Source: Adineta vaga
Lineage: Eukaryota > Animalia > Rotifera
Assembly: GCA_021613535.1 (NCBI GenBank)
Contig: CP075497.1
Location: 3,844,001-3,908,000, forward strand
Direction: 5' to 3'
Length of the DNA stretch: 64,000 nt
Part shown: one piece after another, positions 3,011 to 49,951 of the stretch
How positions within the stretch are numbered: position 1 is the first letter of the stretch
How the letters are laid out: each line of letters starts with the position of its first letter
Translations under genes and position numbers: made by a program
Notes under the pieces: model-generated
Databases searched by the model: none
Told to the model about the DNA's origin: nothing
The model's input: only the letters and a program-made list of their open reading frames with translations

Positions 3011-3661
3011 ACATCCTCAAGATAAAAGCAAAACGTTCAATAATCATTTTTGTACTTCAATGAACATTTCTTCGTCGTGCAACTCGACCACTTAATCACC
3101 CTCAAGATAAAAAAATTACGAATCCAAAATTTTATATCACACTCAAATGTTGACAAAGATTTTTTCTTCTAAAATCATTTGAGGTTCGAGGCGATTATCA
3201 CAACTAAGTTGAATTAAAAGAACCTCATCAATTAATACTGAAAAAACGAGAAGATTGTATTGATAGGATGTCAGATCTCAATCGATAAACTAATTAGTCC
3301 TCATTGTACAACAATCTCTGCTTTATTGGAAATAAAATTTAATTAAGAACATTGGCTTGATATGTGAGATTCGCTATAAGTAAGATATTACTTAAGAGTT
3401 TTTGTATTGAAAGCAAAAGAAGAAATTGTCATTATTCGTTACATCTTAGAAAAGATATATGCATATTTTGATTCATTAAGATTTTCTAATTAAAGTTCTT
3501 TCTCAAAACTGATCTATCGCAGAGATTCGAGTAAACTCAATTTAGCCTCACAAATCTGTCCATTTGCATGCGACAAAGAAAGAAATGAATCAAACGTTTT
3601 TCAGTTGATCTGTCTTTGATTTCGCTATGTAGAGAAGTGATGATATTTTTTTCATTGAAAG

Positions 3662-4008
3662 AAGTGTTGCTCTGGCAGATCAATGTCGCCACCGATCCGC
3701 ACGATTTCGTCATCGCAACATGTATTTTATTCGTAAGAATATTTACCTCTTGGTAAGTTGTAATAAGTAACTTGTCTAGATGAGGTGTGGAGCAAGACGT
3801 TTTCATTGTCCCCACATCTATTGTTTTGGAAGAACCAAAAGAAAAGTGCAAAGTGTAGAGACAGCGTAGATGTCGTGCTCCACATGTTGTGAAGATAAAT
3901 TGCTTATTAAAACTTACCAAGAGGTAAATATTCTTACGAATAAAACACATGTTGCGATGACGAAATCGTGTGGATTGGTGGCAACACCGATCTGCCAGAG
4001 CAACACTT
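3662..4008. mobile_element. Foldback MITE with ~140-bp inverted arms and ~70-bp spacer (Mutator-like)
   Basis: 3662-~3800 is a near-perfect reverse complement of ~3870-4008; flanks tcattgaaa / tcattcaaa resemble a degenerate 9-bp target duplication. Confidence 0.8.
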
Positions 4009-7966: not shown

Positions 7967-9339
7967 ATGACAGAAGAAGAACGTCTATCAAATAATTTAG
8001 AAACCGAAGAAAATGTTTTCTCGAAGGAAGATAAGAAAACATATTTGCAAATTTAGCATGAACAATGGAAAACAATTGTCACAAGTATTTTATTGTGTTT
8101 TGCTTCTATATTTCTTGTGACTTCATATTCATTCAAATCAGTCACTATTAGTGGAAAAAATTCAAACGTATGTAATTGTCGAAAACAAGCAAAAAACAAT
8201 TATGGATATCCTTCGGAATTAATTGAAAATCTCGTTCGTGATAAAGATATTAGTTTTGTATTTCCAGTATATTCTGGCCATGCAGAATCTTTACTTAATC
8301 TTCTTCGATCAATACGAAATCTTTGTGATGATTGTACCCAAGTGCCAATTATTATAATCACTGATGATGAAAGTCAAAAATTAATTCATGAAATTTTACA
8401 TAAAAATCATAGTTTATCAGATCCTGCAATGAAGCAATCATTTCCAAATCTTTCGATTAAACTTCTTCGTGATGTAATGCCATATTATGAAGCGAACAAA
8501 TGGAATGATAATAGTCTTCTCGTAAATGGAAAGTATCTTTTTCAATCACATAAAAAAATGTTCGGAGTTCTTAATGGTGCTTCGACCCGTTTTTCATGGG
8601 TAATGGATGTTGATGGTTTTATATTTAAACCAATGTCATTAGCAAAAATATTGAAAAACTATCTCTCATTACCTTATATATTTACTGCACATGGTTGGTC
8701 AGTTGGCCGAGATGTATTTGAATGTGCAGAAAATCTAACCGGTAATTTTCTCTCGACTGGATATACTCTTGAAATCATGCATTGGATATATGATAGAGAA
8801 ATTGTATCTGATTTCAATAAAGTTGTTCTTTCACAATATCCAACATGGAATATACCAATACTTTTTCAAAAAACTTATTTCTTTGAGGTTGTTTATTATC
8901 ATTTTATTATGTCAAACCAAATTTTATATAGAAAATACATGGAATATAGAATTGTTGATGTACGAACTTTACTTGGTGGAAATTTTTCATCTTTATTACA
9001 AACAGTTGCGAATAGTGCAAATGGTGGAATGATCGAAAGGATTGGTATTTCAATCACAAGATTTCCTAAGATTTATAATGGTATTGTTCATATTTGGAAA
9101 AAATTTCAAATACCTTTTTATCGTCCTGAAGGTGATGAACGACTTATACCGATTTTGCTCTCGATACTGATGTAGTCGTTATGACAAATAATTTTATACA
9201 TGGATTATATAGAATGGGAATATCAGGTTATTGGAAAAATCCAGCAGAAGCATTGGAAAATGCTGAAAAACAACAATGGAAATCATTAGCAGATCATTTG
9301 AAGAAAAGAATCAATAAAACTGAATTTCGTCGAGAATGA
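7967..9339 (+). pseudogene. Type II membrane GT-A-fold glycosyltransferase-like gene, intronless, with a premature stop and a frameshift
   Basis: ATG 7967 is in frame with the 8093-9175 ORF but TAG lies at 8054-8056; hydrophobic anchor IVTSILLCFASIFLV; ISFVFPVY, IIIITDD, WVMDVDGF (DxD); after ~9150 another frame continues DFALDTDVVVMTNNF...RRE to TGA 9337-9339. Confidence 0.7.
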
Positions 9340-29682: not shown

Positions 29683-30970
29683 TTATTCAGAAAAGTATTG
29701 CGCAACAAATGCATTCCGTACTGTTGTCCATTCTTCATCTGTCATGCCAGCATAGACATCGTAGAATTGATGTGCAAACAGTTTTTGTGCAGGTATATTT
29801 GATCGTCGTGTAATAGTTGGTGATGAATCATTCAATGATGAACGTTCAGGTGATCGATCAGAACCGTCTGAATCATGTTGATTTTCATTATCTTCTGTCT
29901 TTGTAGTTGATGCGAGATTGATTGCTTGTTTTTGAGGATCTTAAATAAATAGATAAGGTCGATTAAATGAAAATTTCTTTTTAATTACTTTTCTTTTTTC
30001 CCAAACGTGATTGTTGTGCAGTCAGTAATTCTTGTCGTTTTTTTCGTTCACTTGCTAGTTTTACTAATCGTTCTTCTCGTTGACGATTGGATTTTTCTAA
30101 TGCTTGTTCAGCTTCTGTACCTTGATGTTTGATAGCAATTTTCTCTTCACGTTCACGGATCATCGATTTTTCATTTCGCTTTTTCCATTTAAATTTTATA
30201 ATCGTTCGACGACTTTGTACTTGACCGAAAATTTCAGCAAAAGTTTCAGCTGTTTGTCCAAATATATCTCTTATTTTTAGTCGAGCACCATGATCTAAAA
30301 GCATTTCCATCTCTTGCAGTGAAGCACGAGCAACTGCAACCATTAATGGAGTGCGTCCTGCTGCTGTTTGATAATTAATACCAACATCTGTTAGAAGAAA
30401 ATCAAATAGTAACGAATTTTTCTATTTTATTGATGAGATTTCAATATTATCATACATACTATTTTCACATAGACGACGTACTATGCCATGTCTTTGACGA
30501 TGTGCAGCTGTAAATAAAGCAATGCTACCTCGTTCTCGAATATAGTCTTCTTTCTCTTCTGGAGATAAACTATCAGCAATTGCTGATGAAAATGGAACAT
30601 CGGGCAAAACACCGAGTTGAAAAAGCTAAATTAATTGAGCGCGTTTTTTTTACAATGGAAAAATATATCAACTTCAAAATTTTAGATCTATAGTTACCTT
30701 TGCTTCATCGTTAGCTACAACAGCTTGAACAATTGGTTCATAAATAAACCATACATCGAGTACAAACGTACAGTTTGGCACGGGATCATAATATTTCAAT
30801 TTTTGTCCATCAAGTAAATTACTTTCATCCAAATAATATATCCATTGAAGATGTGCTGGTATTCCACATATGATTTCAAGAATGATTTTCAATTCTCGAA
30901 CTTTTGTATTGAAATTTATTGTTCGTAATTTGAATCGTTCACCTGTTGAACGTAAAAATATATTAATCAT
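29683..30970 (-). CDS. ANKRD60: Ubiquitin-like + ankyrin repeat protein (ANKRD60-like)
   Basis: TGERF...VRELK..LE..CGIP.HLQ..YYLDE..L.D...LKYYD.VP ubiquitin-like domain; ankyrin motifs ALFTAAHR and GRTPLMVA; stop at 29683-29685. Confidence 0.75.
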
Positions 30971-31762
30971 TCGTTCAAGAACAACGACGATCGAGAGAAA
31001 TAAAATGAAGTTGACATTATAAATGCATACTATTTATTTGTCACGATGGAAGCAAGCAATTGAAGAAAAAATGACATGGCAATAGAGGGAGTACAGACGA
31101 TCAAAACTTTTTATTGGTTCGAACGAATGATTTTCATTTCAATAAATTCTTTTAATATGCGCACAAAATTCAAGAAAATGAAATTTAAAAAGAATCCAGT
31201 TGAAATTTGAAGTTTATCTTTTCAAACATATTATTAGAAAATGTTTCATCAGTGAGTATCTTTGCTAAAAGTAAAGTATGTAAAAAGAACAGATATCGAA
31301 TTCGATGATTGAGCGACCACAAATAAAATCATAGCATATACACACTAAAGTATCTTGAATTCCATTGAAAGCAAAAAGAAATAGAAAAATCCTATATTCC
31401 GTACCCGCAATTGTATCGAAACGAAACTAAAATCTGTTGTAATGTTCCATTCAGGTAACGATGAACTCTATTTATTAACTGATTAATTTGTATATTACAG
31501 ATAATCATTAGAATGAGAATGAGATCATTCGACATGCATTTTTTTCTTAATCTTTTTTTCCTGAATTTAAAAGTATGATCAGTAAAACAAATGAAAATTT
31601 TTTTTAATCGTATTAGTACAGATGATATAATGATTTTTGTCATACTAGTAAAAAAGATATTCATCTCTATCGAAGCATAGGGATACAATAGTATAACATA
31701 AATAATTCTTTTGCTTAACCTTGAACACAAGTATATCAAGTCACAAAATGTATGTTGTTGTA

Positions 31763-32833: not shown

Positions 32834-35800
32834 TCAATTCATCCATTTTCGACAATTAGTTGTACCACATAAACACGGAATTTTCGAATCTTCTTCGAAA
32901 TCAAATTTATAATCATACATTATTTCTTCACCTTTTGCAATACGTCGATTAGTAATGATAATGATTTTGCTGTCTTTTTCAATTTGTACAACTTCAGCAA
33001 TGGAATTTGGCTAATACAAAAACGAAAAGATAAGTTCAACTCAATGAATAAAATCATTTCATTTACCTCGCATGAATGATTTATATAACGAGCTAAACAA
33101 CCACTCATTGTTGCATCAACAACATATTCTTCATCTAATCGAAACATATAGATTCCACGATTTTGTTGTTCATATAGTTTTTCTCGTTTATTAGCAACTT
33201 CATTACGAATTAATTCACCTATATACTCAATAACCATTGTATGTTTTTCCAGATCACGGCCAGCAAATAAGCCCAATCCCTAATAGAATTCACGAATTAT
33301 CTTTATATACAAATAGAACATTCTGACTTACCTGAATACGTGATTTAGCAAGAAATACATTTTGACGCCATTCAGTTTTTAATTTTCGATATTGAGTTGA
33401 TTTTGATAGAACAAAATGTTTGACATAGGGAATTTGAGTACCTAAAAATCAAGATTAAATAACATGATCACCTTTAGTTTTGTTTATTTACCTTCAACAC
33501 CAAGTACAGTTCGTGGTAGAGCACTTCGAGTCGAATGTGAACTTGTCAATGTTTGTGCATGACTATATGATATACGAAATATGAATTCAATATTCAATTT
33601 GATAAACAAATAGTCTTACCGTCGAAAATGAGTATTTAATTTTGGTTCACTTCTTGCACAACCGGTTGGATTTAATGTTAATGGCATATCTAATAATTGT
33701 AATCGACCATATTTAAATGCATAGTTTTGTAACATTTCAACGCCTGGCAATGATTCAATGAGACGTATAATATGTGGCTCCTGAAAGAGACAAAATATTA
33801 AGTGTATATGATTTTATATTTATTAACTTACAGTTAGTCCGTACAAATCTTCTCCACTGACAAATATTGAAAACATTTTTACTAGACCATGTTGTCGTCT
33901 TAATGCATCAATTTCATCGACAATTCTATGCCAAACAGCTTTCGCAGTTCGTTCAAAAAATTCTTGTGCTGGTTCATCAATATTTTCTTGTATACGTATT
34001 CGAAACATTGGTTTATTATCAACATCAATTATTGAACAATGATAAGCACAACGACGATTTGGACGACGCATAGACCAATAAAATCGTGTAACAGTATAAC
34101 CGACCTGAAATTAAAATATGATTTTAAATACAAATCATCGCAACTAAACCAAATGATCATTTACAGGATAGATAAAATTTCGATTATGAAATACAGCTGA
34201 TTGTAATTGATGTGGTAACAATTGACCAACATTGTGAAGAACAAGACTACCGATACGAAGTGTATATGATGTTTCTTCATGTTCTTCTGTCATATAACTA
34301 CAAGCAAAGATAAACGATCAATATTGAACTGATTTTAGATGATTGCTTACGTTTGAATTTGTTTAACTTCATCTCTATTAATCCAAACTTTACGAATAAC
34401 AGATTTATCATCGAGTATTTGATCCATTGCCGTTGTTCGTGAAGCATGAATTGGACACATAATTGTCTATAAAAATGCAATAGATCGAAAAATAATAATC
34501 AATTTCTTCTCTCGACTTACTTTATTCTTATAAAATACACAACCACTACTAACCGCACATGGAAAATGATATGCATTTGGACAACGTTGAGAAAAACATG
34601 TTAAACTGGCACCTTTTTGTTTACATGATGCGCATTCGGTAGTAATTGAACGATTATATGCTTGTTCAACACACATTAGTGCACCACTAACTGTTTCATA
34701 GACTTCTGTTGACCATAGAGCACAATTTAAATGACACCATTGACCAACATCAAGATTAAGTAATCTATAACGAGAAAAGAAAAAGAAAAAGAAATGATAT
34801 CGATAAATATTCGAAATATTGATTCAATTATCAATATATACCTTCCAGGTCCATTTGTAGTCAAATCACCCACACCACTACAAAAAGCACAGATTCGTTT
34901 ATCTTGTTGAGCATTTGCTGACAATGGTATTTTCATTTCTGTAATTAATTGTTCGATTTCATTTGTATTTGATGGTCGTATAACAGTTTTTAATGTCATA
35001 CTTGGATCCCATCGTTTCCATCGAATATCTTTCCATCGTTTATCACCATTCGACTAAAAATAATTTATTTCTAAAATAATTATTCAAATATATATATATT
35101 TTTACTTTATTAAGAGTTTCATGCCGTCGTTTCAATGATAAACGTCGTGGTCGTCCATTCGGTGAACCATTTAAATCATTTGGTGTACAAGGTGGTGATG
35201 TTGTATCCATTGATTCATTTTTAATTGTTGGAGAACTATTTATTGAAGTATTAACAGTTAATGCTTGTTGTTGATTATGAGTATTTGATAGACAAGTATT
35301 AAAACATTGTTCATTACAAAAATAAATAAATGGTTCAGAATTTGGTATCAATTCTCTAACGGATGATGGTAATTCAGTTAAACGTTTTTTAAATAAATTA
35401 TCTGATGTTAAACGTTGTGTACAATTACGACAATGTTTTGGTTGCATTTCTATTAATGATTGAATACTAACACTTGTTTCTCGTCCACTTTTATATGTCG
35501 AAGTTCCTCGACTTATAATCGGTAATTGAGCAATGGTTGATGATGATGATGATGATGATGATAAAAAATGATTTGAATGATTTGTATTGACTGTTGTTGA
35601 ACATGAACAATTCTGATCTGATGCAGAAGAATATGGAGCATTGGAATTATTATTTAATGTTTGACGAACATCAAATGTTGATGGATAAGCTATTTTAAGT
35701 AAATCAGCAACAGCAGCAATGACACTTTGAACATTATTTGCAGCTTCAGTTGTTAATGTTAACGTTACTGATACCTATTTTCAAAAATAGAAATAAAAAA

Positions 35801-38800
35801 AAAAAACTAAAAAGAATGAGTTGTATGTGATTTTATTACCTTGTCCGTTCCTTCGACAAGTTGTCGATCTTTCTTTTCAAGTTCATTGCCATTTAGTGGT
35901 AGTGGTACAGTTGTGGTTGTTGAATCAATGGGTTCTTGTTTGATATCAACCGTTGTATTTGTTGTCGTTAGTGTTGGTGGTGCCGAGGATGACGATGGTA
36001 ATAATTCACTGTTCTTTGTTGTTGATATTTCATTTGATATTAATACAGGACTTAAAGATCTATAATCATGAGTAGATGATAATGTTTTAAGTAACTGACT
36101 ATTTTCAGTTTCAATATTATTTAATATATTATCATCATCAGCCAATGTTGATGTTGATATAATACTTTCGTCGTCCCGTATGTCATTATTTTCTTCTTTG
36201 ACTAATAATTTAGATAATTTATCATTTGAATCCATAGCTAATGGTGGCGATGGTAAACTAGGAGGATGATCGAGAAGTGTGGAACATATACGATAACGTC
36301 GTTCAAGTGCTGATAGAGGATTGGTAGCTAGAAAAAGGAAGAAACCAATGTTATTTTCTATTATATTACAAAAAAAATTGCAAAACTAAACTTACGGATT
36401 GTTAATGAGACTGGTTTAGGAGGAGGTCGTCGTTGTGGTCGATAATAATCATTAATATTTTCAATAAATACATGACCAAAATCACCTTGATATTGATATT
36501 TTTTCTCAGATAAATCGATCGGTAATGATAATGAAAGTTCATTATTAATATCAATAGATGGTTCGAGTGGTGTTAACATAGGTAAATCACGTAATTGTTG
36601 TAATGAATGTTCCACAAATTTCTCTGTTTCTTCGGTTCCTTTTTCTAAATAATATACAATTTTTGTTTAGTAGAACAAAAGAGAAAAAAAATTATCGATT
36701 GACATACTTTTACGTTTACGTGCTTTAGTTGGTACATCATCATCAAAGGATGCATTCATATCATTAGGTTTACGTTTTTTTCGTGGTTTAGGAATTTTCA
36801 CATTGGGAAGAGATGATGTTGAAGGATTCGGATGTGATAGAGTATTCATCGGTGGATTGTATAGATGATGATGATTATTCGAATAATTATGTGATGTATT
36901 ATCATGTATTGGCATTTGAGAATTGTCGTAGGGATCATTATTATCAGTCGCTATACCATTGGACATTCCATTACCTCCAACTCGTGCTTTCAATGAAGCA
37001 ATTTCTTCAGAATTCTATGCAGAAAAGAATACCAATGAAATATGAATGTTTGTTCTTCAAAAAAAGAATTGAACTTACAGCTTGTGGATTAATTTGTAAT
37101 AAAGATTTGAGAATATTATCATCAGTAGTAAGCATACCAGATGGCAAATGTAGAACTTGCTGTGGCATTGATTGTTGTTGATGTACATGTTTTTGTTGAT
37201 TTAAAAGACTATCATTCATGTGAGAATTGGTTTGAAGTGGTGTAATATGTTGTGATGATTGTTGAATTTGCTGAGGAGGAGGCGGTGCTGATCGATAGAG
37301 AGTATTATGATCATAAATAATAGGCTGTTGTTGTTGTTGTTGTTGCATAATTAGTTGAGAAGGTGGTGGAGGTCCACGCGGTCCAAATGCATTTGGTGGC
37401 ATCATACGTGGTTTCATCATTTGATAATTATGTTGTTGCTGTTGTAGTGGTTGCTGCGGTTGTTGTGAGGCTTGTATCATATGTGGATAACGTAAAACAA
37501 CAGCTGATGGACCTGAAGGTATTCCATTTGTTGGCATACCAGGTCTAATAGATTGTTGTGGCTGTAGAGATGTTTGTTGTTTAACTTTACCAATACCAGT
37601 TACAGTTGTGACTGGTGATGAAATCATTGGGCGAGTATTAACATATATTCCAGTTGGTGGATGATGAGGCGTCGATGAAAGTTGATGATGTGATCCATGA
37701 GATGCAATAATATGTGGATTATCTAGTTTATTTTGTACATTCATTTGTTGTGGTGAAATAAAATTATTATTGGTATTGGTTGCTTGAGGTGAGGATTGAT
37801 GAATAGAATAACCAGCTAGTATGGTTGGTGTTATCGATGCTTGATTCATATGATGCATATTAACACCTAAATTATTTGGTAACGGAGATGGAAGAGGTAT
37901 AAGTGATGTAATTGAAGTTGAATTCGGTGGAGATTGCGGAGTTTCATTTGCTCCTGGTTGTGATGGTTGTCTTGTCATTGGAACATTAATACCATAATTA
38001 TTTAATAGATCTTGATTAAATCGAACATGATGTGAACCAGCTTGAATTTGCTGTGGCTGTTGCTGCTGTGGCTGTGATTGCTGCTGTTGTTGTTGTTGTT
38101 GTTGTTGCAGCGGTTGTTGTGGAACAATATTTCGTGCTGTTGGCATATTTGTCATTGTACCATTGTTGGGTGCTTGAGGTAGACGAACTTGTTGAGAAGA
38201 ATGACGTTGTAGATTTCCAGACATTGATGGTGATGACATTGATACATCGTCAGAAAGTTGATGTGGAGTACCAGGTGTTGGAGTACGAGAAATAGTACGC
38301 GGCGATTGAACATTAGTAATACTATGCTGTTTTGAAGGTGATGGAGAATGAAGGAGATATTTATTCGCACCCGATGGATCATTGGACGGCTTAAATAAAA
38401 GAAGATAAATGAAATTATTTTTCAAAACACTATCAAATCGTTTCGATAATTCTTACATCTTCAATATGTCGTACAGGATCATCAAAAGGATTTTGAACAA
38501 CGATCGTCCTAGAATACAATAAAATATGATTGATATAAATCACAAATGACTTTTAATTTCATACATCGATTTTGAAGGATTATTCGAATTATCAACACTT
38601 GTTGTTCGTATCATTGGTGAATGATATAATCGTGCATCAGTAGGTGTACGTGGTGTATTGATAATAGTAACATTATTTCCAATTGCTGTCACTGATCGCA
38701 TATGTTGTGTTGTTGATCCATCTATTGTATAAACATTGTCTGTTTTAATATCAAGCTTAGTTGGTGGCGGCGGTGGTACTGACGATACTGAATCATTCAT
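32834..38800 (-). CDS. KMT2C: KMT2C/D (MLL3/4, Trr-like) C-terminal unit: Q/P-rich region, extended PHD, FYRN/FYRC, WIN motif, SET and post-SET
   Basis: GCARSEP (WIN), SRIQGLGLFA...HTMVIEYIG...YMFRLD...ARYINHSC...YDYKFDFE...CLCGTTNCRKWMN; candidate own ATG at 38800 with an in-frame stop upstream. Confidence 0.9.
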
Positions 38801-39336
38801 TGTCGATTTCAATTCGACAAATCAATCGTTCATGTATCATTGAATATAGACATATACAAAACAATACTGTTCGTGCTAATATCAGCAGAAGATATACATC
38901 TAAAACATGGAAGATAAAAGACAAAAAAGAAGAGAAACAAAAGAAAAATGTCATTATCTACAAGTTCATCAGCGAACAACATAAAACAAATAGCACACAC
39001 ATACGCTCACACACAATCTGTTTCGTAGTTTCGTGTTGTTTTTTGAAAGAAATCCCTGGAAGTGAATTTTTTTCAATGCTTAATAATACCGGAAGACGAA
39101 AAAGTCAACAAACAAAGATAACTTAATCACAAAAAGAATGGAAGAAGAAACATAACACATGAAAGTCTACTGTTTGAACTTGTTCACAACCGGATGTTGA
39201 TTGCATTGGCTCAAGAATAATGAGAGAGAGAGAGAAATAAAATGCAATGAAGTGCACCACAGTGAAAGAAAACAAAACAAAAGAAATCAAAACAACAAGG
39301 AAAAAAACGGAAATAGAAAAGTAAAACAAAACAAAA

Positions 39337-42300
39337 TCACATTGTTGCTGAAGATGTTGATGCACCATTGGATAATATCGAAGAAATAAGTTCAGCAACA
39401 ACAGTACGACCTGATTCGTGAGATGATGTCGATGGAAAATAATCATATTGTTGTGAAGATAAATTCTCTTGATTTAATGGAACATATGATGAATCACAGA
39501 TAACATTATGCTGTTCTGTATATGATAATCGAGATTGATAACGATGGCGTGTATTTTCCGATTCTATCGGTACTTCACCTTGACCAGAGATGACTGTCGA
39601 AATTACTTCATCAATTTTTTCGAGAACATCAACAGGTACATCTGAATTTGAGAAAAGAAATGCAATGAGGAAAGGAAAGTGTGATTGACAGAAATACTTT
39701 GTAAGATATCAATGCGTGGTGTCGATTTTTTTCCATTGGTTGGAAGACGATTTTCAGAAAATGATGAGTCAATAGTTGGATTTGGTCGATGTCCTTTAGT
39801 TGGTGGTATGACAGCAAAACACGATGTGGATCTCATCGGCGGTGGTTGAGAATGGTATGGATGAATTATATCAGATGAATTTGAACTATAAGCTGAATCT
39901 TTAAAGAAGAAAAATAGACACGATCAAAGAAAAATCAGTTATTTCAAGGAAATGGAATAGGTTATTTTACAAGGTGATGTTTTAGATTGATGTCTGTTAG
40001 TTTTTGTTATAAATGAAGCAGATGTATCTTTACCAAATGAAGATTGAAGGTCCAGTGGTGGTAACTATATATAGATGATATAATCATTCATTTAATTTAA
40101 AGAAAAAAAATTCATCTTACTGAATGTTGTTGATATGATTGTGAATGTTGGAGATCATTAGATTGATAATGTGTATTTGTAATACATGATTGTTTATCAA
40201 TAATCATCGTTTTCGGTAAGCTATCTTCCTGAATTTGTTGCTGTTGTTGATAGACTTGATATAGATGATAAGATTCATCCATACCTATCGATGATGAATT
40301 ATGTTTAACATCTAATTTTGAACGATGAAATTCAGGTGATTGAACTGAAATAATACTTCGATAATTTTTAGTTATAAAATAATTTGTAAAATTACCTGCT
40401 GATAATGATCGTCCATCAGGACATGAATATGTTGTATTAAGTAACGATGGTTGTGCCATATGTGGTTGTGTTAACCATGGCATATAACTAAAAGAATTGA
40501 AGATTTTGTTCGATTTTTCAAATTAATAAAATTTACTCTTGACGAAGAATGTTTTTATTTGTTTGAGAATGAAGTGTAGTTTGTAATGGACCAACGGTGG
40601 ATTCTTCTAATTCTCGAGCCATATTTCGAATAATTTGATTAGGATTATTCGTTTGATAGATACCATTATTGGACCAATCCATTGCTAAAGACAAGAAAAT
40701 CAAAGTTTAGAAATAATTTTACGACGAATGAATTACCTGATGAATTATCATTTTGATTTGGTTGATCAACAAATTCAATAAATTCCCAAATATCTCCCGA
40801 GGTATTACCTACATATAGGAAACTAATCAAATGAATACAATCAAAATCATTCTTTTTTACATGGCGGATTTGGTGCTGCTGGATTTAAAATATAATCAAC
40901 TAGATCAATGAATTCTTCATTATTAAAAATAGGTTCTAGAAAATAAAATAAATATTCAATTCAATTTCATCAAAGAATCATTCATACGCATTTCATTTTC
41001 TTCTTCATTTGGTAGAGATGATGTTGGTTTTTTCTTCGATGATAGATATTTTATTGTATCAGCATCTAATTGAATAGCATATTCATTATTTAAACATTTT
41101 AAATTCATCATCGTCGAATCATTATAAGATAAATCATCCTTCAATGGATTTTTTGCTTGATTTTGATTGGCAAGTTCCATACCAAAAAATGCTTCCTAAA
41201 CAAACAACAATTGCATAAGAGAAGAAAATCTAATGAGTAAATGATTTACCTGCATTTCTGGTGGCATATGTTCTTCAAGTATAGTCTTTCGTAAACGTTT
41301 ATTCTTCGTACGTAATAATTCACTATCCATATGAAGTAAATCTTGACGACGACGATTACCCCGAATTTTCACAATAAATCCTCCAACACCTTCAATATAG
41401 ATTAATAAACAACAGAATTATATCGATCTGAAAATGATGTTTTGTGTTGTGTAGAAATGAATATTCACCTGTATATTTTTTGATAGTCGTCTTTTTTATT
41501 TGTTGTTCATTTGTTAGATGAAGTTTTTCTTCATCGGATCGTTCATCTTCATTGATTAACGATGAATTTGTTCTTTTAAATAAATTTTGATTTTTTTGTA
41601 AGCTCTGCTTTGATCTTCTTGATGATTGTGTTGAAATTTTTGGTCGAATAGATTTTAAATGTGCAATACCATGATCTGTTAAATAAACTCCTTCATCAAA
41701 TTTCACAGGTTTCGTTTGTGAAATTTGTTGATCATTCATCGAACAATGCGATGAATGTCTCATTAATGTTAATGTTGATTGATCTGGTTTACATAATAAA
41801 CATGTAAATGATTGTTCATGACATTTTTTCTCAGCCATTTCTTCTGTAAAGATATTCGCACACATACTATGACACCAACGATTACAATTCATACATTGAA
41901 TAATTAATTCATCCGAAGAATATTTACGTAAGCATAAAGGACATGTATTTAGTGAATAACATTGACCACATTCAGTATAATTATTTTCCCATTGACAATC
42001 AATGCCTGGACTTGTTGAACCACATTTTAAACATCGCACACACCTATGAAAATGAAATTTTTCGATCTAATCGATATTTAAATATTACATATAAAAAGTA
42101 AATCATACCATTGACATTTCCAATTTCCTTTTGGTACTTGATCAAGTGGTGGTGTAAGACAATAAGTATGATATGATATATCACAATCATCACATAAAAG
42201 AAGTTTGCCTTCATCCGTTGTTTTACCACAACATTCACAAACAGTACAATCAAGACAACGCCAACCTTTATCAAATATAACTCGAGAAATCTAAAGAAGA

Positions 42301-43509
42301 ATGATACTTTGCAAAAATGAAATTTATTCAAATAGAAACGAACCATTTTTGTAAAACCAACACAATATGGATGATAACTTTGTCCACATTGAGAACATGA
42401 TATTAATTGACTTTCTTCATCAACACCTATACTTCCACAACTCACACACATATCCTAGAAATCAAAATAGTTGTTAAATTAAACAAACATTTTCTAGGTT
42501 TCCTACTTGAGAAACCGCATAAACTTCTTTCGAAGAACACAGAACAGTTACAGAATGATGTTCTTCATCTTCTTTGATTGATTCGTGTTGAGAAGAAACA
42601 TTTTCCTAAATAATTATTTCTTTCTAATCAACAAGTTCAATTATTAACTAACTACTGTTGTCGCTGTTGCAATTGTTGAAATACTATAATCATCTTTTCG
42701 TACTTTAATCGGTCGACCACGTGAACTTGATAATGTTCGATGACATTGTATAGATTGTAAATTATCTGAATTTGAAGAATATGATTGTGGACTTATCGAA
42801 TTTGGTGGTGTTGGAGAATCCAAACTCAATCGATGACGACGACGACCACCATTCTAAAAGAAATGCATTTCATTTTTTATTATTCTACCACTATTTCCTT
42901 TTAGAATCATACTCGTCTAGCACGTTTCCGATTTAATGCATCAGTATTAGTATAAGCTTGTGCTGGTTTTCCTATTCCGTGTTTACTATTTACACGAGCA
43001 CCTCGTGTTGTTGTTGTTAGCACCGGTTTTGTTGGTATCAATGGCTAAAATTTTTTTTAAAAGAATGAAAAAATCATCGAATATTTTTATTTTACTTCTG
43101 CTTCGAAATATGGTAAAAACGTATGTTTATCACAAAAAATATCATTGACATCTGCCATACAACTATTGCAATTTATTTCCGAATCAACTATAGACAAAAA
43201 AAAATAGAATTGATATTCATTATACATAGATACTTACAATTAAATGATACAAAATCCGATTGATCGTCGGACATTTTTCTATTCGATGAATTAAACAAAT
43301 CTTGTGAAGATGACTCATCGCTTAATCTAGAAATTAAATGAATTTGAATTGAATATATATATATATATATTTACATTCAATTTCTTACCGTTCATCATCA
43401 AATTGTTTCGAATAAATTCCTGATTGAATAGATGTACTGTTCTAAAGAGATTATAAACAGAAGATTAGAGAAAAAAAGGAATTAACTCTCATTTTCTAAC
43501 CTGACACAT
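39337..43509 (-). CDS. KMT2C: KMT2C/D N-terminal unit with triple-PHD cassette (Lpt-like); start codon uncertain
   Basis: MCVSCGSIG...[25 protein letters not shown]...[36 protein letters not shown]...CMNCNRWCH; last exon reads ...SATM then TGA (39337-39339). Confidence 0.8.
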
Positions 43510-45042
43510 TTCGACGACAATTGTCGAATTCAATGGAAGTATTTCAATTCCAGAAAATATTTCTGAAAAGTCCTGGTCATATACGTACTGTTCTAAAAAC
43601 TGATCATCATTTGTTTGTTTACTTTTTTTTTCTCTTCTCCCTTTCGTAGAACAACAACAACAACAACAACACAAGAGCAATTTGACAAATACTAGTGTCG
43701 ACCTCTGCTGATATATGAGACAAAGATCGAATAAAACTATTTATTTCAACGAAAGAATCTTTTCAGATAACTAAACTTCTTCGTTAATTTCCTTTTTATT
43801 TCTATACGTTTATGTATATCAAGATAAAAAGCCTATAACGAAGATTAGAGACGCCATTTTGAAATTCTCTCATTATCTTTCGAGGTCACTTGTCACGCTT
43901 AATAGATCTGATTAGATGAAATATTTCTCTTCGAAATAAAATCAATTATTTTTTATCGAATTTAAATAAAAAAATTTAAAACAATTAAATGAAAACTTCT
44001 TTCAATTGAGATATTTATTTAGTATAAAGCGACTTGATTTATTATTGGATAGACGGTAATTCAATGAGAAACAGTAGAAAGTAATAATGACTGAACTGAA
44101 GAGATGCATAACGACTATTGTCAAAACAAACGGTAATGGAAATTTTTTTTATCCATATGTAAGATCAATCTACAGAGGATTTCAGATCGAGATTTGAACA
44201 ATCAATTCTCTAGTTTTTGTGGGTTAACTGAAAAAATAATGTAAAAAGCATTCTACGCTTCATTTTTTATCACATTATAAAATTGATTTGAAACATTGTC
44301 TTTGAAAGGCATTCATAAAATCTTGAATTCGAGAAACTTTCCAATTGTAGATCTGTACAAAGTCTCTCTCTTTCCTAATACCAGTTTCTATCAAAATTGA
44401 AATCGATTCTGGACATTATTGAGTATCATCTGATGCTTTAGACTTCGAAACATGAAATAAATTCATAACTTTTTCCGAACCAAATTTGATTCAATACAGA
44501 TTTTCTTTGATTATTGGATTGTAGACCTTGGTAGTAATGTAAGAGTTTTTTTTTTCGTCGTTCTTCAAACGAACGTTTACAAGGTAACATAACATTCGAA
44601 TGTCTGTATTGTTCTTATTTCATTTTGTAAACGTTATTTTTTCTTTTCTATTCAATATTCATGCAGTCTAGTCCCTCTTCTTTCTGTTATTGCTCGTCTA
44701 TCGTTCTAATTCGTCCATCTCTGTTTTATTGCCCTCTCTTTGTGCTTATATGCTCAATAGAGAAATAAACAAAAGTGCACTAGGGATTTAGATTTTTTTG
44801 TTCGTCGTTTATTATTAATCAATGTTTACTTTAGTCGCCGTTTACTGAGTTTGTATAAATCAAAATGGAAAGAAGTCAATCTTTTATTCTTAAGTGAATA
44901 ATTTGCGAATAAGAGTTTCTTTTTTCTATTATTAATCCTTCAAACGGAAAAGTTATTTTGAAGCGCCAAAATTTGTTCTGTTTAATGATATTATGAATGT
45001 GTTATTGACTATTTTTTAGATAGGAAAAACGTTTATTAAAAA

Positions 45043-48000
45043 ATGGCTTCGATGACGAATAATTCGATGGAAATGAATGCTGATTATATTCCGCCAGTTA
45101 AATTAAAAAAGACAATAAATGAGGTAAAGATTTAAAATGAACTCTTTTTCGTCTAGGTATAAATTCTATTTATTTTTAGGTTGATCATAATGATTTATAT
45201 TGTTTTGAATGTCACGATGAAGGTGATGTGATTTGTTGTGATTCATGTTCACGTGTTTATCATCCTAAATGTCTTGCATTGACAAATTTACCAGATGGCG
45301 ATTGGACCTGTCCAGAATGTAAAGTATGTAGCGAAGAGTTTATTGTATCGATAGATCGTTTCATTTTGTTTTTCATCAGATAACACAATCATCATTTGAT
45401 ATCGCAAATCTTTCCATGAATGACTTTCATACTATGTTGAAATTTGCGCTCCGTCGAATGAAATCTCATCCACAAGTAAGATTTTATTTAATAATTTCTC
45501 GAATTAATTTTTTGTTTATTTGAAAAGGCTACACCATTTATGCATCCAGTTGATTCCAAACAAATGCCGGAATATTTGGATTATATTATTCATCCAATGG
45601 ATTTAGAAACAATTGATAAAAATATCGATTTAAAAAAATATCGATCAACTGATGCATTTCTTGCAGATGTGAAATGGATAACACATAATAGTGTTGTTTT
45701 CAATGGAAGCAAGTAGTCTTAATTTCACTACGACAATCCATTCATCATTGTGTATTTTCATCTTTTAGATCAAAGTAAATTCACTGCTATCGCACGTGCA
45801 ATTCTAAAAATTGCTCGACATGAAATGACAGAAATTGAAATTTGTTCCGAATGTTATCTACGTAGTGCACAACCATTAACACCAGATTGGTTTGCTGAAC
45901 CATGTACAATTCCACATACATTATGTTGGGCAAAAATGAAAGGTTATCAAGCATGGCCAGCGAAAGTCTTGCGAATTGTAAATGATGAAGTTGATGTGCG
46001 ATTTTTTGGTCAACATGATCGGTAAATTGATTTGAAAAAGAAAATAATCAGATTAAATTATGTTGACTCTTCTTCTTTTTCTTCGTTTGTTCTAGTGCAT
46101 GGGTACCGATTAATAATTGTTTTATTCTTTCTAAAGAATATCCAGGTTTAGAGAAGAAAAAATCAAATATGAATTTTGAAAAAAGTCTTACAGAGTTACA
46201 AACTCATATTGATAAATTAAAAGCAGTGTATGAAAATTTTCATTATGCACCACTTCAAACACCACTCAGTAAAACGAAACCGTTTAAATTCGTTTCAATT
46301 ATTGATGGTAAGAATTCTATGATTTATTAAAGATATATCTTTATCAGATATCTCTCCTATATTATATAACAATGTATTCTATAGATAGATTAGAAGATAA
46401 GACAGTGGTAGACTATCTATTTCTGATAGAAAGAAAACAAATGAGATTAGAACTTTCTCGATTTATGGCGTAGAACAAAAAGACATGAACAGAGAAGAAA
46501 ATGTCTTGTTTAAATAGATTCAATTTTACCATCTTATGTGACCATTGGAAATAATAGTAGTACACTTCGTTCATCAATCAAGTGTCTTAAACAAGCACGT
46601 TCACCTCTTCCACAACAAACAACTGAGTCAATGATGAATATTAAAACCACAGCAAAACGTTCGAATGAAAATTCACAAGATGCACAAGAATCTGTTAAAC
46701 GTGCAAGAGTTTCATCACGAACTGTTGAAGATAATAGTACGAATTCGAATCGTATTGTACTTCGAATTCGAAAACCTAGTGAAGATTTATCGAGCAGTCG
46801 AAGTGAAACATCAAATAGTGGTAGTAGTCATCAAGTTACAGTTCAAATTAAAGAATCATTATCAACTTTAAAAGAAGATGATGAAGATCAAATTGAATCA
46901 CAATCGATGAACGTATTTGAAATTTTTAATCATACTGATCAAACTCCTACGTCATCTCAAAAAGATGATGAGTAAGTATAATTTAACAATAAAACACATT
47001 CAATTCTTTTCTATGAATAGAATACCGGCTGAATCTCCTGAAAATCAATCAATACCGTCTCCACTTCCTCCGCTCTCAAATGATAATAAACAATCTTGTG
47101 TCTCACCTATCGAGCATATCGATTTAAATGCAACAGATGTCAGATTATCAATGAATGCTTTACTCGATGCTATTGATGCTCTTAAATCCATATCTGAAGT
47201 TCGTACAAATCAATCATTACTAATCGCAACAACAGCATCTACGAATGAATTTCGAGCACTACAACTTCCCTTTGCTGAACGACGTACAACTATGAAACAT
47301 CCAAGAAAATCTCGTTTACAACATCGCATAATAACATCTCAACCGAAACCATTTCCTACAAATAACATTCCTCTTCCATCTGTGGAACAACCACATTCTC
47401 CTACGTCAAACAATCTGCCATTACGACCATTATCTATAAGTCCCACGAAGTTAGTTTCAATCCACTTTTTATCCTCAATCTTAGTAACTGTTAAAATTCT
47501 TCCCTTTTGTTTTAGTACTGATATGTTAGAAGAGAATCCAATCTTAGCGAATGATGAATTAGTAACATCACATGGACCCGTTGAAAGAACGCCATCGATT
47601 GAAACGCATAATGTTAAATCTGAACCAATTGATAACGAAGAACATAAAAAACAACGAATAAATCTTCCACAAACATCTATTCAATCAACTACACCAAGTT
47701 CATCGTCATCACTCTCTACGAAATCGTTTCTTATATCACCTCCAGCAACTACACATCATCATCAGAAAACTAAATCAACTATACCTTCTCTATCGACGAC
47801 ATCCAATCCTCCTTTTCCATCATTGATACCAAATAGTAATACTACATTTGCACCACGAATATCATCAACCGCTCCACAGAAAACAAACTGGCCAACTACC
47901 GTACCGATGCCTTCTGCGACACGACAACTACCACATACAGCTCCGAAACGACCTGCTCCACCTCTATATCCCTCAACAGCACAACGTAATAGTAATATGA

Positions 48001-48773
48001 ATGCTGCAACAACGAAAATAACTCCTTCAACAGCATTACAACCTCAATCATTTGATCTTTTTTCTATAAATGCACCTGCACAACGAAGACCTAATGGAAT
48101 AACTCATCCAACATTGACTTCCAATACACCACCATTACCAACTCGAAATCCTATACGTGTAAGTTATCCTCTCATTATTATAAATAATCAAAGAAATTGA
48201 GATCTTCATTATTTTGTTTTGATTTCATTGTACTTAGATGCCACAATTTAATAATCATCTCATTCGTCCACCAATTGACGAGTAAGTTTTATCTTTAAAT
48301 TTCAAATTTTCTATTAAAATCATTACTCTTCATAGTCATCAAACACCTGGTGAAATACAAATGATTATCAAAACATTTAATGATAAAGTAACAAAAAGAT
48401 TTTCGGATTTTTCTAAATTTAAACAATTTTCTTTGTTTATTTAGTTTCAACAATTATTAACTGATTTTACTGTCAAAATTGAAACAGCATTAGAATCAAA
48501 TCGTATAAAATATGAAAAAGAATTAGAAGAGACACGTCGAACATATCGTATGTCAATGAATGAATTACGTACAATAACAAGTAAGCTAAGAAATGAGATA
48601 TCTATTTAATCTGATATCATCTTTTGTTTTCTTTAGCTCAACAAGTTCAAGAAATGCACAATAGTTTAGAATTACAATATTGGACACGTCTTTCTGAAAT
48701 GCGTAATCGTTATGAATCAACTCTGCAACAACATCCAAAACCTCCGAAACAACTCAATGGTGGCCCTCGTTAG
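45043..48773 (+). CDS. ZMYND8: ZMYND8/ZMYND11-like PHD-bromo-PWWP chromatin reader; no MYND finger visible
   Basis: NDLYCFECH...WTCPEC (PHD); PFMHPVD...HPMDL...[10 protein letters not shown] (bromo); [13 protein letters not shown]...[13 protein letters not shown] (PWWP); terminal coiled coil then TAG. Confidence 0.88.
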
Positions 48774-49086
48774 TCAATCATACTTATTTCAATGTATATT
48801 CTTTTCTTCGTGTTTATTTTCTTTTATACAGTATTGTTCTTCCGTTATCTTCTCACTATTTTTCTTGTCTGATCTCAATATATATATATACATGAAGATA
48901 TATATTTGACACATAATGTGTAATTATATTAATTTCGAAAAAAAAGTGCATTTATTTATTTGAAAATCCACACACATATATTAAAGCAATAAGAGATGAA
49001 TATCAAATAATATAAAAGGTAATTAGGGTGAAATAAGTAAAAAGGATAAAACAAAACGAAAAAGCGATGTTTTTTCGTTTGAAAAA

Positions 49087-49951
49087 TTAATCAAGACCAA
49101 GATTTAATGGGTGTTTGGGTGTTTCATTAAGAAAGAATTTTTTCATAAATTCGGAAAAAAGATTGTCTAAATCGAAAAAAAAAGATATTCTTATAATTGA
49201 TCTATTTAAATTCAAAAGTTACTTACAATCCATTTTCTTTTGGCCATGTTCAGTAATGAAATCAAAGGCTTTTTCAGCGCTTGATTCATCAATATCCCAT
49301 GAAATAAGCATATTAGCAAATTCATCTTTTGAAACGGCTCGTTCATCTAATATACAAAATAGATTCTTGAAAATATCACTTGTAAAACTATTGATTTACC
49401 CAAAAATTCATTGGCACGAAATAAAGCTTTATGTAATCCTTCGTACCATTCAGGGAATTCATTTTTCTCTTTTAAACCTCCAATAATATCATTCATAACA
49501 TCAAGCCATTCGTCTTGATAAGAGAAAACAAAACAAATTCTTTGATATAAATAAAAAAAGAAAATTGACCTACCTAAATCAATATTTCCATCATTATTAG
49601 CATCACCAACTGCGCATAAATCCCAGAAATATTTCTGAAAATGTTGTTCAAGACGTTTACGTAAAACTTTCAAACGAGCATTTTTTTGAGCATCTTCTTG
49701 TGATACAATCGACTAGATCCATGGAAAAATAGAAGAGGAAAAGTTCAAATTCATTGCTCTAATCAATCATAGAAGAACAAACCTCGATAGCAGCTTCAAA
49801 ATCTGTCCAGTTGACAAGGCCATCATTGTTCGTATCTAAAATAAACAATATAGGATGATATAAGATACATTAGGATTGACTTACCGAGTGTTTTAGAAAA
49901 GAATTGTTCAAGTTTTTTCACGGCAGTTTTCGGAATATTATCACGAGGCAT
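49087..49951 (-). CDS. Sarcoplasmic calcium-binding protein / calexcitin-like EF-hand protein, 6 exons
   Basis: EF hands DTNNDGLVNWTDF and DANNDGNIDLDEW; PEW motif; C-terminal FF...P.HPLN..G typical of the family. Confidence 0.85.

What the first reader, a model, noticed from the sequence alone, without database searches (positions are those of the whole stretch)
38457..39641. KMT2C/D appears split into adjacent PHD-reader and SET-writer genes, with a possible splice switch that re-fuses them
Seen (minus strand): the PHD-containing part ends ...GCA ACA ATG TGA (stop 39337-39339) and is followed by ~430 bp of T-rich, UTR-like sequence. The SET-containing part has its own ATG (38800). An in-frame TGA lies 24 nt upstream of that ATG with no AG between them, so this exon cannot be joined in frame at its 5' end; an orphan acceptor (ttttag, 38900) lies further upstream. 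However, the terminal ATGTGA also contains a phase-2 GT (AT|GTGATT at 39340), and the acceptor at 38509 is phase 2. Skipping the 38565-38800 exon would therefore give an in-frame full-length protein (..AT-M-TIVVQNPFDD..). Established: Drosophila splits this gene into Lpt and trr. Inference: an independent fission with the halves still in tandem, or one locus making reader-only, writer-only and fused products. I also see no HMG box or first PHD cluster.
Basis: partly seen in the sequence, partly recalled or inferred. Interest (0 to 1): 0.8.

Follow-up and report, generated by a model that had tools for sequence, protein, structure and literature searches.

The report
Rotifer KMT2C/D split into two genes

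Summary

RNA contigs from three studies keep the stop at 39337-39339 in mature RNA and run unspliced to 38899. One contig carries a non-genomic poly(A) tail there. Contigs of the downstream mRNA begin at 38899 behind the last 11 nt of the rotifer spliced leader (SL).

- The upstream gene encodes 995 aa with one three-finger PHD cluster.
- The downstream gene (about 1650 aa) carries ePHD, FYRN, FYRC and SET, and starts at ATG 38800.

The stop, the roughly 0.5-kb gap, the acceptor, a 5-codon uORF and the ATG are conserved in seven other bdelloid loci, including records labelled Adineta steineri and Rotaria sordida. The syntenic homeolog on C3 is a stand-alone SET gene with a homologous start, and a PHD paralog stands alone on C1. 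Brachionus has the two halves in tandem, annotated as two genes.

The proposed re-fusing splice (39341->38508) is not among the listed joints, and two relatives lack the acceptor it needs.

KMT2C/D fission is already known in dipterans and planarians, so this is a new lineage. The zero-spacer poly(A)/SL boundary is of the Ciona operon type. Other agents of this scan noted operon-like SL units elsewhere in this genome.

The parts
38899..43760 (-). Upstream 'reader' gene (N-terminal half of KMT2C/D; Lpt/Cmi-like). My model has 19 exons. The 5' end is uncertain: RNA contigs stop at a repeat near 43641-43681.
   Evidence: The 15 listed joints all resolve to GT..AG introns of 47-65 nt on the minus strand. 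Four more introns were inferred from contig piece ends or from sequence and homology. Joined locally, the exons give one open frame of 995 codons.
39337..43274 (-).
   Evidence: The last exon, 39641-39340, ends ...[16 protein letters not shown].
41469..42454 (-). Single cluster of three PHD fingers (PHDb type), in exons 42454-42344, 42290-42109 and 42043-41469.
   Evidence: Pfam PF00628 scores 28.3, 44.8 and 17.6 bits; the third is below the cut-off. These exons are 77-97% identical to the same exons in other rotifers.
39337..39339 (-). The GT of AT|GTGATT may be a fossil 5' splice site.
38899..39336 (-). It is retained in mature RNA.
   Evidence: Contigs of X1, X3, X5 and X6 cover it unspliced and continuous with exon 39698-39898. 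They break only at the (GA)n repeat at 39229-39259. Composition and signal scan.
39180..39213 (-). Conserved non-coding block TGAGCCAATRCAAT..CCGGTTRTGAACAA, which contains a CCAAT motif.
   Evidence: Invariant columns of alignment A1. Also present in L027, L032 and L037. Absent upstream of the C3 gene.
38953..38990 (-). Conserved non-coding block TTTTATGTTGTTCG..GAACTTGTAGATAAT, 50-90 nt upstream of the poly(A)/SL site.
   Evidence: Alignment A1. It is not kept exactly in L027, L032 or L037.
38900..38901 (-).
   Evidence: X3 record 5 (and X1 record 1 by geometry) carries 9 non-genomic letters, reverse complement CTTACCAAG, in front of AG + 38899. X6 record 14 ends at 38899 followed by 13 non-genomic A on the RNA strand. 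The SL consensus GGCTTATTACAACTTACCAAGAG is from PMC3795323.
38801..38899 (-). 5'UTR of the writer mRNA, 99 nt, with four upstream ATGs.
38882..38899 (-). Conserved 5-codon uORF (MYIFC*) that starts at the first base after the spliced leader. Its stop lies in a conserved near-palindrome TGCTGATATYAGCA.
   Evidence: The same start, length and Cys-stop occur in L023, L024, L025, L027, L032 and L037.
32834..38800 (-). Coding region of the 'writer' gene (C-terminal half; Trr-like). ATG 38800; exon 1 to 38565, exon 2 38509-38459, exon 3 from 38389; the protein ends ...CRKWMN.
   Evidence: The first three exons come from RNA contigs. The rest is collinear with residues 11-1655 of P0088. Introns below 38151 were not mapped with RNA.
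32837..34823 (-). ePHD (34823-34470), FYRN/FYRC (34110-33826), SET (33279-32923) and post-SET (33010-32837).
   Evidence: Pfam PF13832/PF13771, PF05964, PF05965 and PF00856.

Best explanation
The KMT2C/D (MLR) gene of Adineta vaga is a true, old gene fission whose two halves are still in tandem. The upstream gene makes a polyadenylated mRNA for a 995-aa reader protein with three PHD fingers. That mRNA stops at TGA 39337-39339 and ends after a 438-nt 3'UTR at 38900/38899. The downstream gene makes a separate mRNA whose 5' end is the rotifer spliced leader joined at the same AG (38901-38900). Behind a 99-nt leader with a conserved 5-codon uORF, it is translated from ATG 38800 into a writer protein of about 1650 aa (ePHD, FYRN, FYRC, SET, post-SET). 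Shown here: the two mRNA ends, the retained stop, the intact frames and the conservation. Inferred: because no base lies between the poly(A) site and the acceptor, the two transcription units must overlap. Also inferred: the two proteins work together in one COMPASS-like complex, as Lpt/Cmi and Trr do in flies.
For: RNA:
- Contigs from three studies run unspliced from exon 39698-39898 through 39641 and the stop to 38899-38923.
- X6 record 14 ends at 38899 with 13 non-genomic A.
- X6 covers only 38899 to about 40100, as a 3'-biased library would.
- X3 record 5 and X1 record 1 start with SL letters, then run 38901-38564, exon 38509-38459 and 38389 onward.
- The SL identity comes from PMC3795323 Table 1. 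The SL's 3' 17-mer occurs 44 times in this genome and never in the reversed control.

The writer is collinear with a full 1655-aa relative.

No fusion is possible through the acceptor. All three frames close between 38899 and 38800, and an in-frame TGA with no AG before the ATG is present in every relative.

Conservation: the same ...M-TGA, a 419-531-nt gap, the acceptor, the uORF and the ATG occur in L023, L024, L025, L027/L028, L032 (labelled Rotaria sordida) and L037 (Adineta steineri). In the last two, NCBI's annotation also ends one gene at this TGA and starts the next at this ATG.

Homeologs:
- Window 38543-32837 is collinear with C3, and window 42575-39544 with C1.
- The window's upstream neighbours are syntenic with C3 directly beside its SET gene.
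- The C3 gene has its own homologous ATG exon, with a TAG just before the ATG.

All named bdelloid SET-half proteins lack PF00628. No AATAAA lies in the 3'UTR, as in Ciona operon upstream genes.
Against: The RNA evidence is from assembled contigs, not raw reads. They cannot give abundances, they drop rare isoforms, and 9 joints and 72 pieces were not shown. The poly(A) tail rests on one contig of one run. No dicistronic precursor was seen, so co-transcription is not shown. The conserved CCAAT block in the gap could be an internal promoter. There are no protein data, and it is not shown that the two products interact. The four uATGs make translation from ATG 38800 look inefficient. Taxon labels of the public records were taken as given.
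Confidence: 0.85

Rival explanations
1. This is one continuous KMT2C/D gene. On this reading the stretch 39340-38510 (or 39365-38788) is a long intron, and the RNA seen in it is unspliced precursor or retained intron.
For: Donor-like sites in compatible phase exist: AT|GT at 39341|39340 with the acceptor at 38509, and G|GT at 39366|39365 with AGs at 38789 or 38780. The order of domains is that of an undivided KMT2C/D.
Against: There is a non-genomic poly(A) tail at 38899 and an SL at the same AG. Contig depth in the gap is as high as in the exons. Introns here measure 47-79 nt, not 580-830 nt. The stop and the ATG are conserved in seven other bdelloid loci. The C3 homeolog has the SET half alone, with a homologous ATG exon. 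Two relatives have no intron at the proposed acceptor.
Confidence: 0.03
2. One reading: besides the two separate mRNAs, a regulated minor isoform splices 39341 to 38508, skipping the writer's first exon, and makes a fused full-length protein.
For: The phases match, so the junction codon would be ATG in both forms. CAATGTGATT is invariant in all relatives, although the codons before it vary in number and kind, which a live donor site would explain.
Against: The joint is not among the 15 listed joints of four runs. In L023 and L027 the writer gene has no introns between its first three exon equivalents (P0009 is a 562-aa ORF and P0087 a 1434-aa ORF, both from the ATG), so the acceptor is missing there while CAATGTGATT is still conserved. 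The C3 and C1 copies are on different chromosomes and cannot be fused by cis-splicing.
Confidence: 0.1
3. There are two genes but no operon. The writer gene has its own promoter inside the reader gene's 3'UTR or last exons, and the SL merely removes a short outron.
For: A CCAAT-containing block about 300 nt upstream of the acceptor is conserved. The C3-type and Didymodactylos writer genes work without an upstream reader gene, so the family can be driven by its own promoter. No dicistronic contig was seen.
Against: The conserved blocks lie inside the mature reader 3'UTR and may serve that mRNA. None of them is found upstream of the C3 gene. The zero-base boundary is the hallmark of Ciona-type operons. 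The tandem order has been kept since before the bdelloid-monogonont divergence.
Confidence: 0.35
4. This is an artefact or decay: the stop is an assembly error, or the upstream half is a dying pseudogene left after duplication.
For: This copy has lost the first PHD cluster and the HMG region that the C1 paralog keeps.
Against: RNA contigs from three studies read the same letters. The 995-codon frame is intact across 18 introns. The gene is expressed and spliced. The orthologues keep the frame, at 61-82% identity in the last exon.
Confidence: 0.02

Closest known systems
Drosophila (dipteran) Cmi/Lpt + Trr, the split MLR/KMT2C-D pair
   Same: The N-terminal PHD reader half and the C-terminal FYR/SET writer half are encoded by separate genes (PMC10570056). 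The cut falls between the PHDb region and the ePHD/FYR/SET region.
   Different: The fly halves are described as separate proteins from an 'ancient split' in dipterans. Here the halves are still adjacent on one strand with a zero-base boundary resolved by a spliced leader. The tandem reader copy has only PHDb. Rotifers and dipterans are far apart, so the events are most simply independent.
Planarian Schmidtea mediterranea LPT + trr-1 + trr-2
   Same: The inventory is the same: N-half gene(s) plus two SET-half genes without PHD fingers (PMC3549883, PMC6128892). Both lineages are spiralians that use SL trans-splicing. Trematode and cestode SET-half proteins of 1400-1900 aa without PF00628 also appear.
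   Different: The planarian LPT lies on a separate contig, whereas in rotifers one pair is still in tandem. Whether the flatworm and rotifer splits are one event or two was not tested.
Ciona intestinalis operons without intercistronic DNA (and the minor C. elegans SL1-type operons)
   Same: [quoted passage not shown] A single SL serves for all genes. There is no AATAAA near the site. The two outcomes are predicted to be mutually exclusive per transcript (PMC1488885).
   Different: A dicistronic precursor was shown in Ciona but not here. As of 2021, operons had not been reported in rotifers (PMC7986045). Here the two cistrons are halves of one ancestral gene.
Undivided KMT2C/KMT2D (MLL3/MLL4) of vertebrates and C. 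elegans SET-16
   Same: Domain order: PHD cluster ... ePHD, FYRN, FYRC, SET, post-SET. The best named matches are KMT2C/2D/trr.
   Different: Those are one polypeptide with two PHD clusters and an HMG box. Here there are two polypeptides, and the tandem copy lacks PHDa and HMG.

Membership tests
KMT2C/D (MLR; Trr/MLL3/MLL4) subfamily | C-terminal SET plus post-SET domain | tested here: met
   PF00856 at E 1.2e-14 on 33279-32923; the terminal exon ends ...CRKWMN.
KMT2C/D (MLR; Trr/MLL3/MLL4) subfamily | FYRN and FYRC close together next to SET, preceded by an ePHD (zf-HC5HC2H) | tested here: met
   PF05964 and PF05965 on one exon, 34110-33826; PF13832/PF13771 on 34823-34470.
KMT2C/D (MLR; Trr/MLL3/MLL4) subfamily | Conserved three-finger PHDb cluster in the N-terminal half | tested here: met
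   There are three PHD exons: two above the Pfam cut-off and the third at 17.6 bits. Sources name the homologues 'MLL3'.
KMT2C/D (MLR; Trr/MLL3/MLL4) subfamily | First PHD cluster (PHDa) and HMG box | tested here: not met
   Exon-level Pfam finds none in the window copy. PHDa is present in the C1 paralog and in Brachionus. Pfam called no HMG box in the C1 paralog either; a box divided by introns could be missed.
KMT2C/D (MLR; Trr/MLL3/MLL4) subfamily | Closest named relatives are KMT2C/2D/trr rather than KMT2A/B or SET1 | tested here: met
   Named hits are KMT2C, KMT2D/MLL2, MLL3 and 'trr' of Brachionus. No tree was built.
Split MLR pair (Lpt/Cmi + Trr type) | Reader half and writer half made from separate mRNAs with their own stop and start | tested here: met
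   Poly(A) end at 38899/38900, SL 5' end at 38899, and the retained stop. Both frames are intact.
Split MLR pair (Lpt/Cmi + Trr type) | The two proteins assemble in one COMPASS-like complex | not testable with these tools
   This needs co-immunoprecipitation or mass spectrometry.
SL-resolved operon without intercistronic DNA (Ciona type) | Same-strand neighbours, with the downstream gene SL trans-spliced | tested here: met
SL-resolved operon without intercistronic DNA (Ciona type) | The upstream poly(A) site abuts the acceptor AG; no AATAAA nearby | tested here: met
   X6 record 14 reads ...TTTTAG(A) followed by A13. No AATAAA or common variant occurs in the 438-nt UTR. The tail rests on one contig only.
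SL-resolved operon without intercistronic DNA (Ciona type) | A dicistronic precursor exists | tested here: inconclusive
   No listed contig bridges 38899.

The most novel reading that the evidence does not exclude
The locus is a living intermediate of gene fission made possible by SL trans-splicing. On this reading the terminal ATG|TGA is the unspliced 5' splice site of an ancestral intron (AT|GTGATT, the same phase and junction codon as the writer's own first donor AT|GTATGA). The writer's first exon arose inside that intron behind an acceptor captured by the spliced leader. It would also be a documented operon in Rotifera.
Probability: 0.3. Interest if true: 0.75.

Novelty: new member of a known kind. 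Interest (0 to 1): 0.58.

Why it matters
KMT2C/D enzymes mark enhancers and are among the most often mutated chromatin genes in human disease. Whether their histone-reading half and their catalytic half need to be one polypeptide is a standing question, and flies are used to address it because their gene is split. Rotifers add a further lineage, after dipterans and flatworms, in which the same cut was made and then kept. Here it has lasted across bdelloid genera, through a genome duplication, and probably since before bdelloids and monogononts parted. That argues that the two halves are modular. Unlike in flies, one rotifer pair is still in tandem, with the two mRNAs separated at a single AG. 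This shows a concrete route by which spliced-leader trans-splicing lets a gene fall in two without a new promoter. It also offers a natural system in which the ratio of reader to writer could be set by RNA processing. Finally, it adds a case to the still thin evidence for operon-like units in rotifers.

Tried and rejected
- DNA search of the own genome with the gap found only itself; the homeologs are visible only at protein level.
- The first word search with the poly-Q exon timed out; restricting it to residues 150-481 worked.
- The exact 25-mer of the published SL plus GT is absent, because A. vaga SL genes differ at the 5' end. The 3' 17-mer gives 44 copies.
- I looked for the conserved gap blocks upstream of the C3 gene, to tell promoter elements from 3'UTR elements. 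None is there apart from a short GAACAGTA, so this gave no decision.
- I tested whether the C1 paralog's C-terminal extension is homologous to the writer's N-terminus, which would have made it a witness of the unsplit state. There were no hits.
- The Rotaria magnacalcarata contig (L026) ends before the junction.
- A second in-frame splice that I noticed (G|GT at 39366|39365 to AG at 38789 or 38780) has no RNA support, and its 'donor' is ordinary coding sequence (NGA) in the relatives.
- The joint 38942->39217 with 35 foreign letters (X3, X6) comes from 22-25-nt low-complexity matches of another transcript, not from this gene.
- Chauhan et al. 2012 (PMC3347691) is not held.
- The big representative search, structure prediction and fold search were not needed.
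Searches were made exon by exon by reference, or with the natural intron-free ORF of L027. Exons were joined only inside a local script, to check the frame.

Full report
WHERE WE ARE. The window is G000:C6:3844001-3908000 of a 100.8-Mb assembly in six contigs. A protein named Adineta vaga lies on a contig of exactly the length of C3, so the organism is the bdelloid rotifer A. vaga. On the minus strand lies a KMT2C/D-type gene region. Three PHD fingers sit at 42454-41469, an ePHD at 34823-34470, FYRN/FYRC at 34110-33826, and SET/post-SET at 33279-32837.

THE OBSERVATION.
- the stop TGA at 39339-39337, after GCA ACA ATG
- the ATG at 38800
- an in-frame TGA at 38824-38822, with no AG between it and the ATG
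- the acceptor ttttAG at 38901-38900
- AT|GT at 39341|39340
- the phase-2 intron from 38564 to 38510

The 438 nt behind the stop are 49% T and hold no AATAAA.

WHAT THE RNA SHOWS. One search found transcriptome-like contig sets of this species from several studies. I laid four runs from three studies on 38151-44000. That they are RNA is shown by 15 listed joints that all resolve to GT..AG introns of 47-65 nt on the minus strand. Three results decide the case.

1. The gap is not spliced out. Contigs of X1, X3, X5 and X6 run from exon 39898-39698 across the 39697-39642 intron into 39641, and on through the stop to 38899-38923. They break only at a (GA)n repeat at 39229-39259.
2. X6 record 14 ends at 38899 followed by 13 A on the RNA strand. 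The genome reads ATGTATATC there, so the A run is a poly(A) tail. X6 covers only about the last kilobase before this point, as a 3'-biased library would (inference).
3. X3 record 5, and X1 record 1 by its geometry, consist of 9 foreign letters, then 38901-38564, then 51 nt (exon 38509-38459), then 38389-38151.

The reverse complement of those 9 foreign letters is CTTACCAAG. With the genomic AG they give CTTACCAAGAG, the last 11 nt of the rotifer spliced leader GGCTTATTACAACTTACCAAGAG (PMC3795323, Table 1). The leader's 3' 17-mer occurs 44 times in this genome and never in the reversed control, often in divergent pairs. One SL RNA gene lies in the window itself.

So the upstream mRNA ends, and the downstream mRNA begins, at the same AG.

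THE TWO GENES. Joined locally in a script only, the RNA-defined exons of the upstream gene give one open frame. It runs from ATG 43274 to the TGA, 995 codons. Four of its introns were inferred from contig piece ends or from sequence and homology.

The downstream gene is collinear with residues 11-1655 of a 1655-aa relative, from 38761 to 32837. Its leader of 99 nt holds four upstream ATGs. The first is the very first base after the spliced leader and opens a 5-codon uORF. All three frames close between 38899 and 38800, so no cis-splice into this acceptor can give a fused protein.

RELATIVES. Word searches by reference and contig look-ups gave these orthologous loci:
- three from one environmental assembly (L023, L024, L025)
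- a more distant one seen in three samples (L027-L029)
- an NCBI record labelled Rotaria sordida (L032)
- an NCBI record labelled Adineta steineri (L037)

Next comes the acceptor with a 5-codon uORF ending Cys-stop. Then comes the ATG of MN(D/E)SVS..., with an in-frame TGA and no AG before it.

NCBI's annotation of L032 and L037 ends one gene at this TGA and starts the next at this ATG. Alignment of the gap shows invariant blocks, among them a CCAAT-containing one and the first 45 nt of the writer's leader. All named bdelloid SET-half proteins fall into two size classes, about 1650 and about 1320 aa, and none carries PF00628.

HOMEOLOGS. Within A. vaga the writer half is collinear with a second copy on C3 (54-86% identity). 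The break in homology is the gap itself.

The window's upstream neighbours (45180-49712) match C3 directly beside its SET gene, so C3 is the syntenic homeolog. The C3 gene has its own first coding exon, MSEP...HHAKS-M. A TAG lies right before its ATG, and the exon is spliced in the same phase onto TIIVQNPFDD. The A. steineri counterpart is alike.

The stand-alone start of the writer gene therefore predates the divergence of the two homeologs. The C1 gene keeps the first PHD cluster as well and has no SET downstream. Its tail shows no likeness to writer N-termini.

DEEPER BRANCHES. The Didymodactylos writer gene has no PHD exons within 9.7 kb upstream. In the monogonont Brachionus plicatilis, an N-half gene (PHDa, PHDb, and a long ORF ending at 8483) lies about 2 kb upstream of 'trr' on the same strand, and the two are annotated as separate genes. 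That suggests, but does not prove, that the tandem split is older than bdelloids.

THE SPLICE SWITCH. The phases do match. However, the joint is not among those listed. In L023 and L027 the writer gene has no introns at all in this part: ORFs of 562 and 1434 codons run from the ATG. The needed acceptor therefore does not exist there, while CAATGTGATT stays conserved.

A rare isoform in A. vaga cannot be excluded with contigs. I read the matching phase as a probable fossil.

HOW IT WORKS. Shown: two mRNAs, two frames, one shared processing site. Inferred: cleavage needs transcription beyond 38900, and trans-splicing needs a branch point upstream of it, so the two units overlap.

The layout is that of Ciona operons without intercistronic DNA. 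There too the tail follows the acceptor AG, AATAAA is usually missing, and any one transcript is thought to yield either the upstream or the downstream mRNA (PMC1488885). I put co-transcription at about 0.55 and an internal promoter at about 0.4. No dicistronic contig was seen.

As of 2021, operons had not been reported in rotifers (PMC7986045). Two other agents of this scan noted SL operon candidates elsewhere in this genome. These are unchecked leads, not support.

WHAT IS KNOWN. The same cut of KMT2C/D is described for Drosophila and other dipterans (Cmi/Lpt + Trr; PMC10570056). It is also described for the planarian S. mediterranea (LPT, trr-1, trr-2; PMC3549883, PMC6128892). I found no paper in the held library that links rotifers with KMT2C/D.

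VERDICT. The re-fusing splice is not supported. This is a new lineage for a known kind of fission, with a tandem, zero-spacer, SL-resolved boundary as its special feature.

LIMITS. The RNA evidence is from contigs only, and the poly(A) tail rests on one contig. Introns of the writer gene below 38151 were not mapped with RNA. Taxon labels of public records were taken as given.

Noticed in passing
window 3660-3771 (minus): A spliced-leader RNA gene: ...TTACTTATTACAACTTACCAAGAG|GTAAAT. Its 5' end differs from the published 23-nt consensus. The 3' 17-mer occurs 44 times in the genome, often as divergent pairs about 160 nt apart, with clusters on C5 near 9.88-9.93 Mb and 10.91-10.93 Mb.
   Followed up: partly
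window 38871-38884 (minus), within the writer 5'UTR: The near-palindrome TGCTGATATTAGCA (perfect TGCTGATATCAGCA in most relatives) overlaps the uORF stop. It could form a small hairpin or be a dimeric binding site. The first 45 nt of this leader are more conserved than the neighbouring coding sequence.
   Followed up: no
All contig assemblies break there.
   Followed up: no
G000:C1:4127850-4136616 (L010+L011, minus): A stand-alone N-half paralog with both PHD clusters, an HMG-like stretch that Pfam does not call, poly-Q tracts and a further possible coiled-coil tail. It has no SET gene downstream, and its neighbours are not syntenic with the window.
   Followed up: partly
L027:5110-9414 and L023:10001-11689: Intron loss: the writer gene of one relative is a single 1434-codon ORF, and another relative has lost the first two introns. 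A. vaga and the R. sordida-labelled record keep them; the latter has an intron of about 1.1 kb.
   Followed up: partly
one search hit list (not in the window): Trematode and cestode SET-half proteins of 1400-1900 aa, and several mollusc models of about 2200-2360 aa, show ePHD, FYR and SET but no PF00628. The flatworm ones fit a phylum-wide split. The mollusc ones may be partial models, because full-length proteins were outside the length range searched.
   Followed up: no
window 41742-41748 and 42147-42165: Clusters of 5-6 close differences appear in single RNA contigs of X3/X5 and X1/X3 against the assembly. They are probably the other haplotype.
   Followed up: no
window 39375-39395 (minus); also L023-L037: The C-terminal motif (A/V)[11 protein letters not shown] of the reader protein is invariant across all relatives and is partly kept in the C1 paralog (ERISSILAS). 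Its function is unknown; it is LxxIL-like.
   Followed up: no
window 29984-31033 and 45180-49712; L023-L025, L027, L037: Conserved neighbourhood across bdelloid loci: a bromodomain/PWWP gene upstream on the opposite strand, and ubiquitin-like, ankyrin and P2X-receptor genes downstream of the pair.
   Followed up: partly
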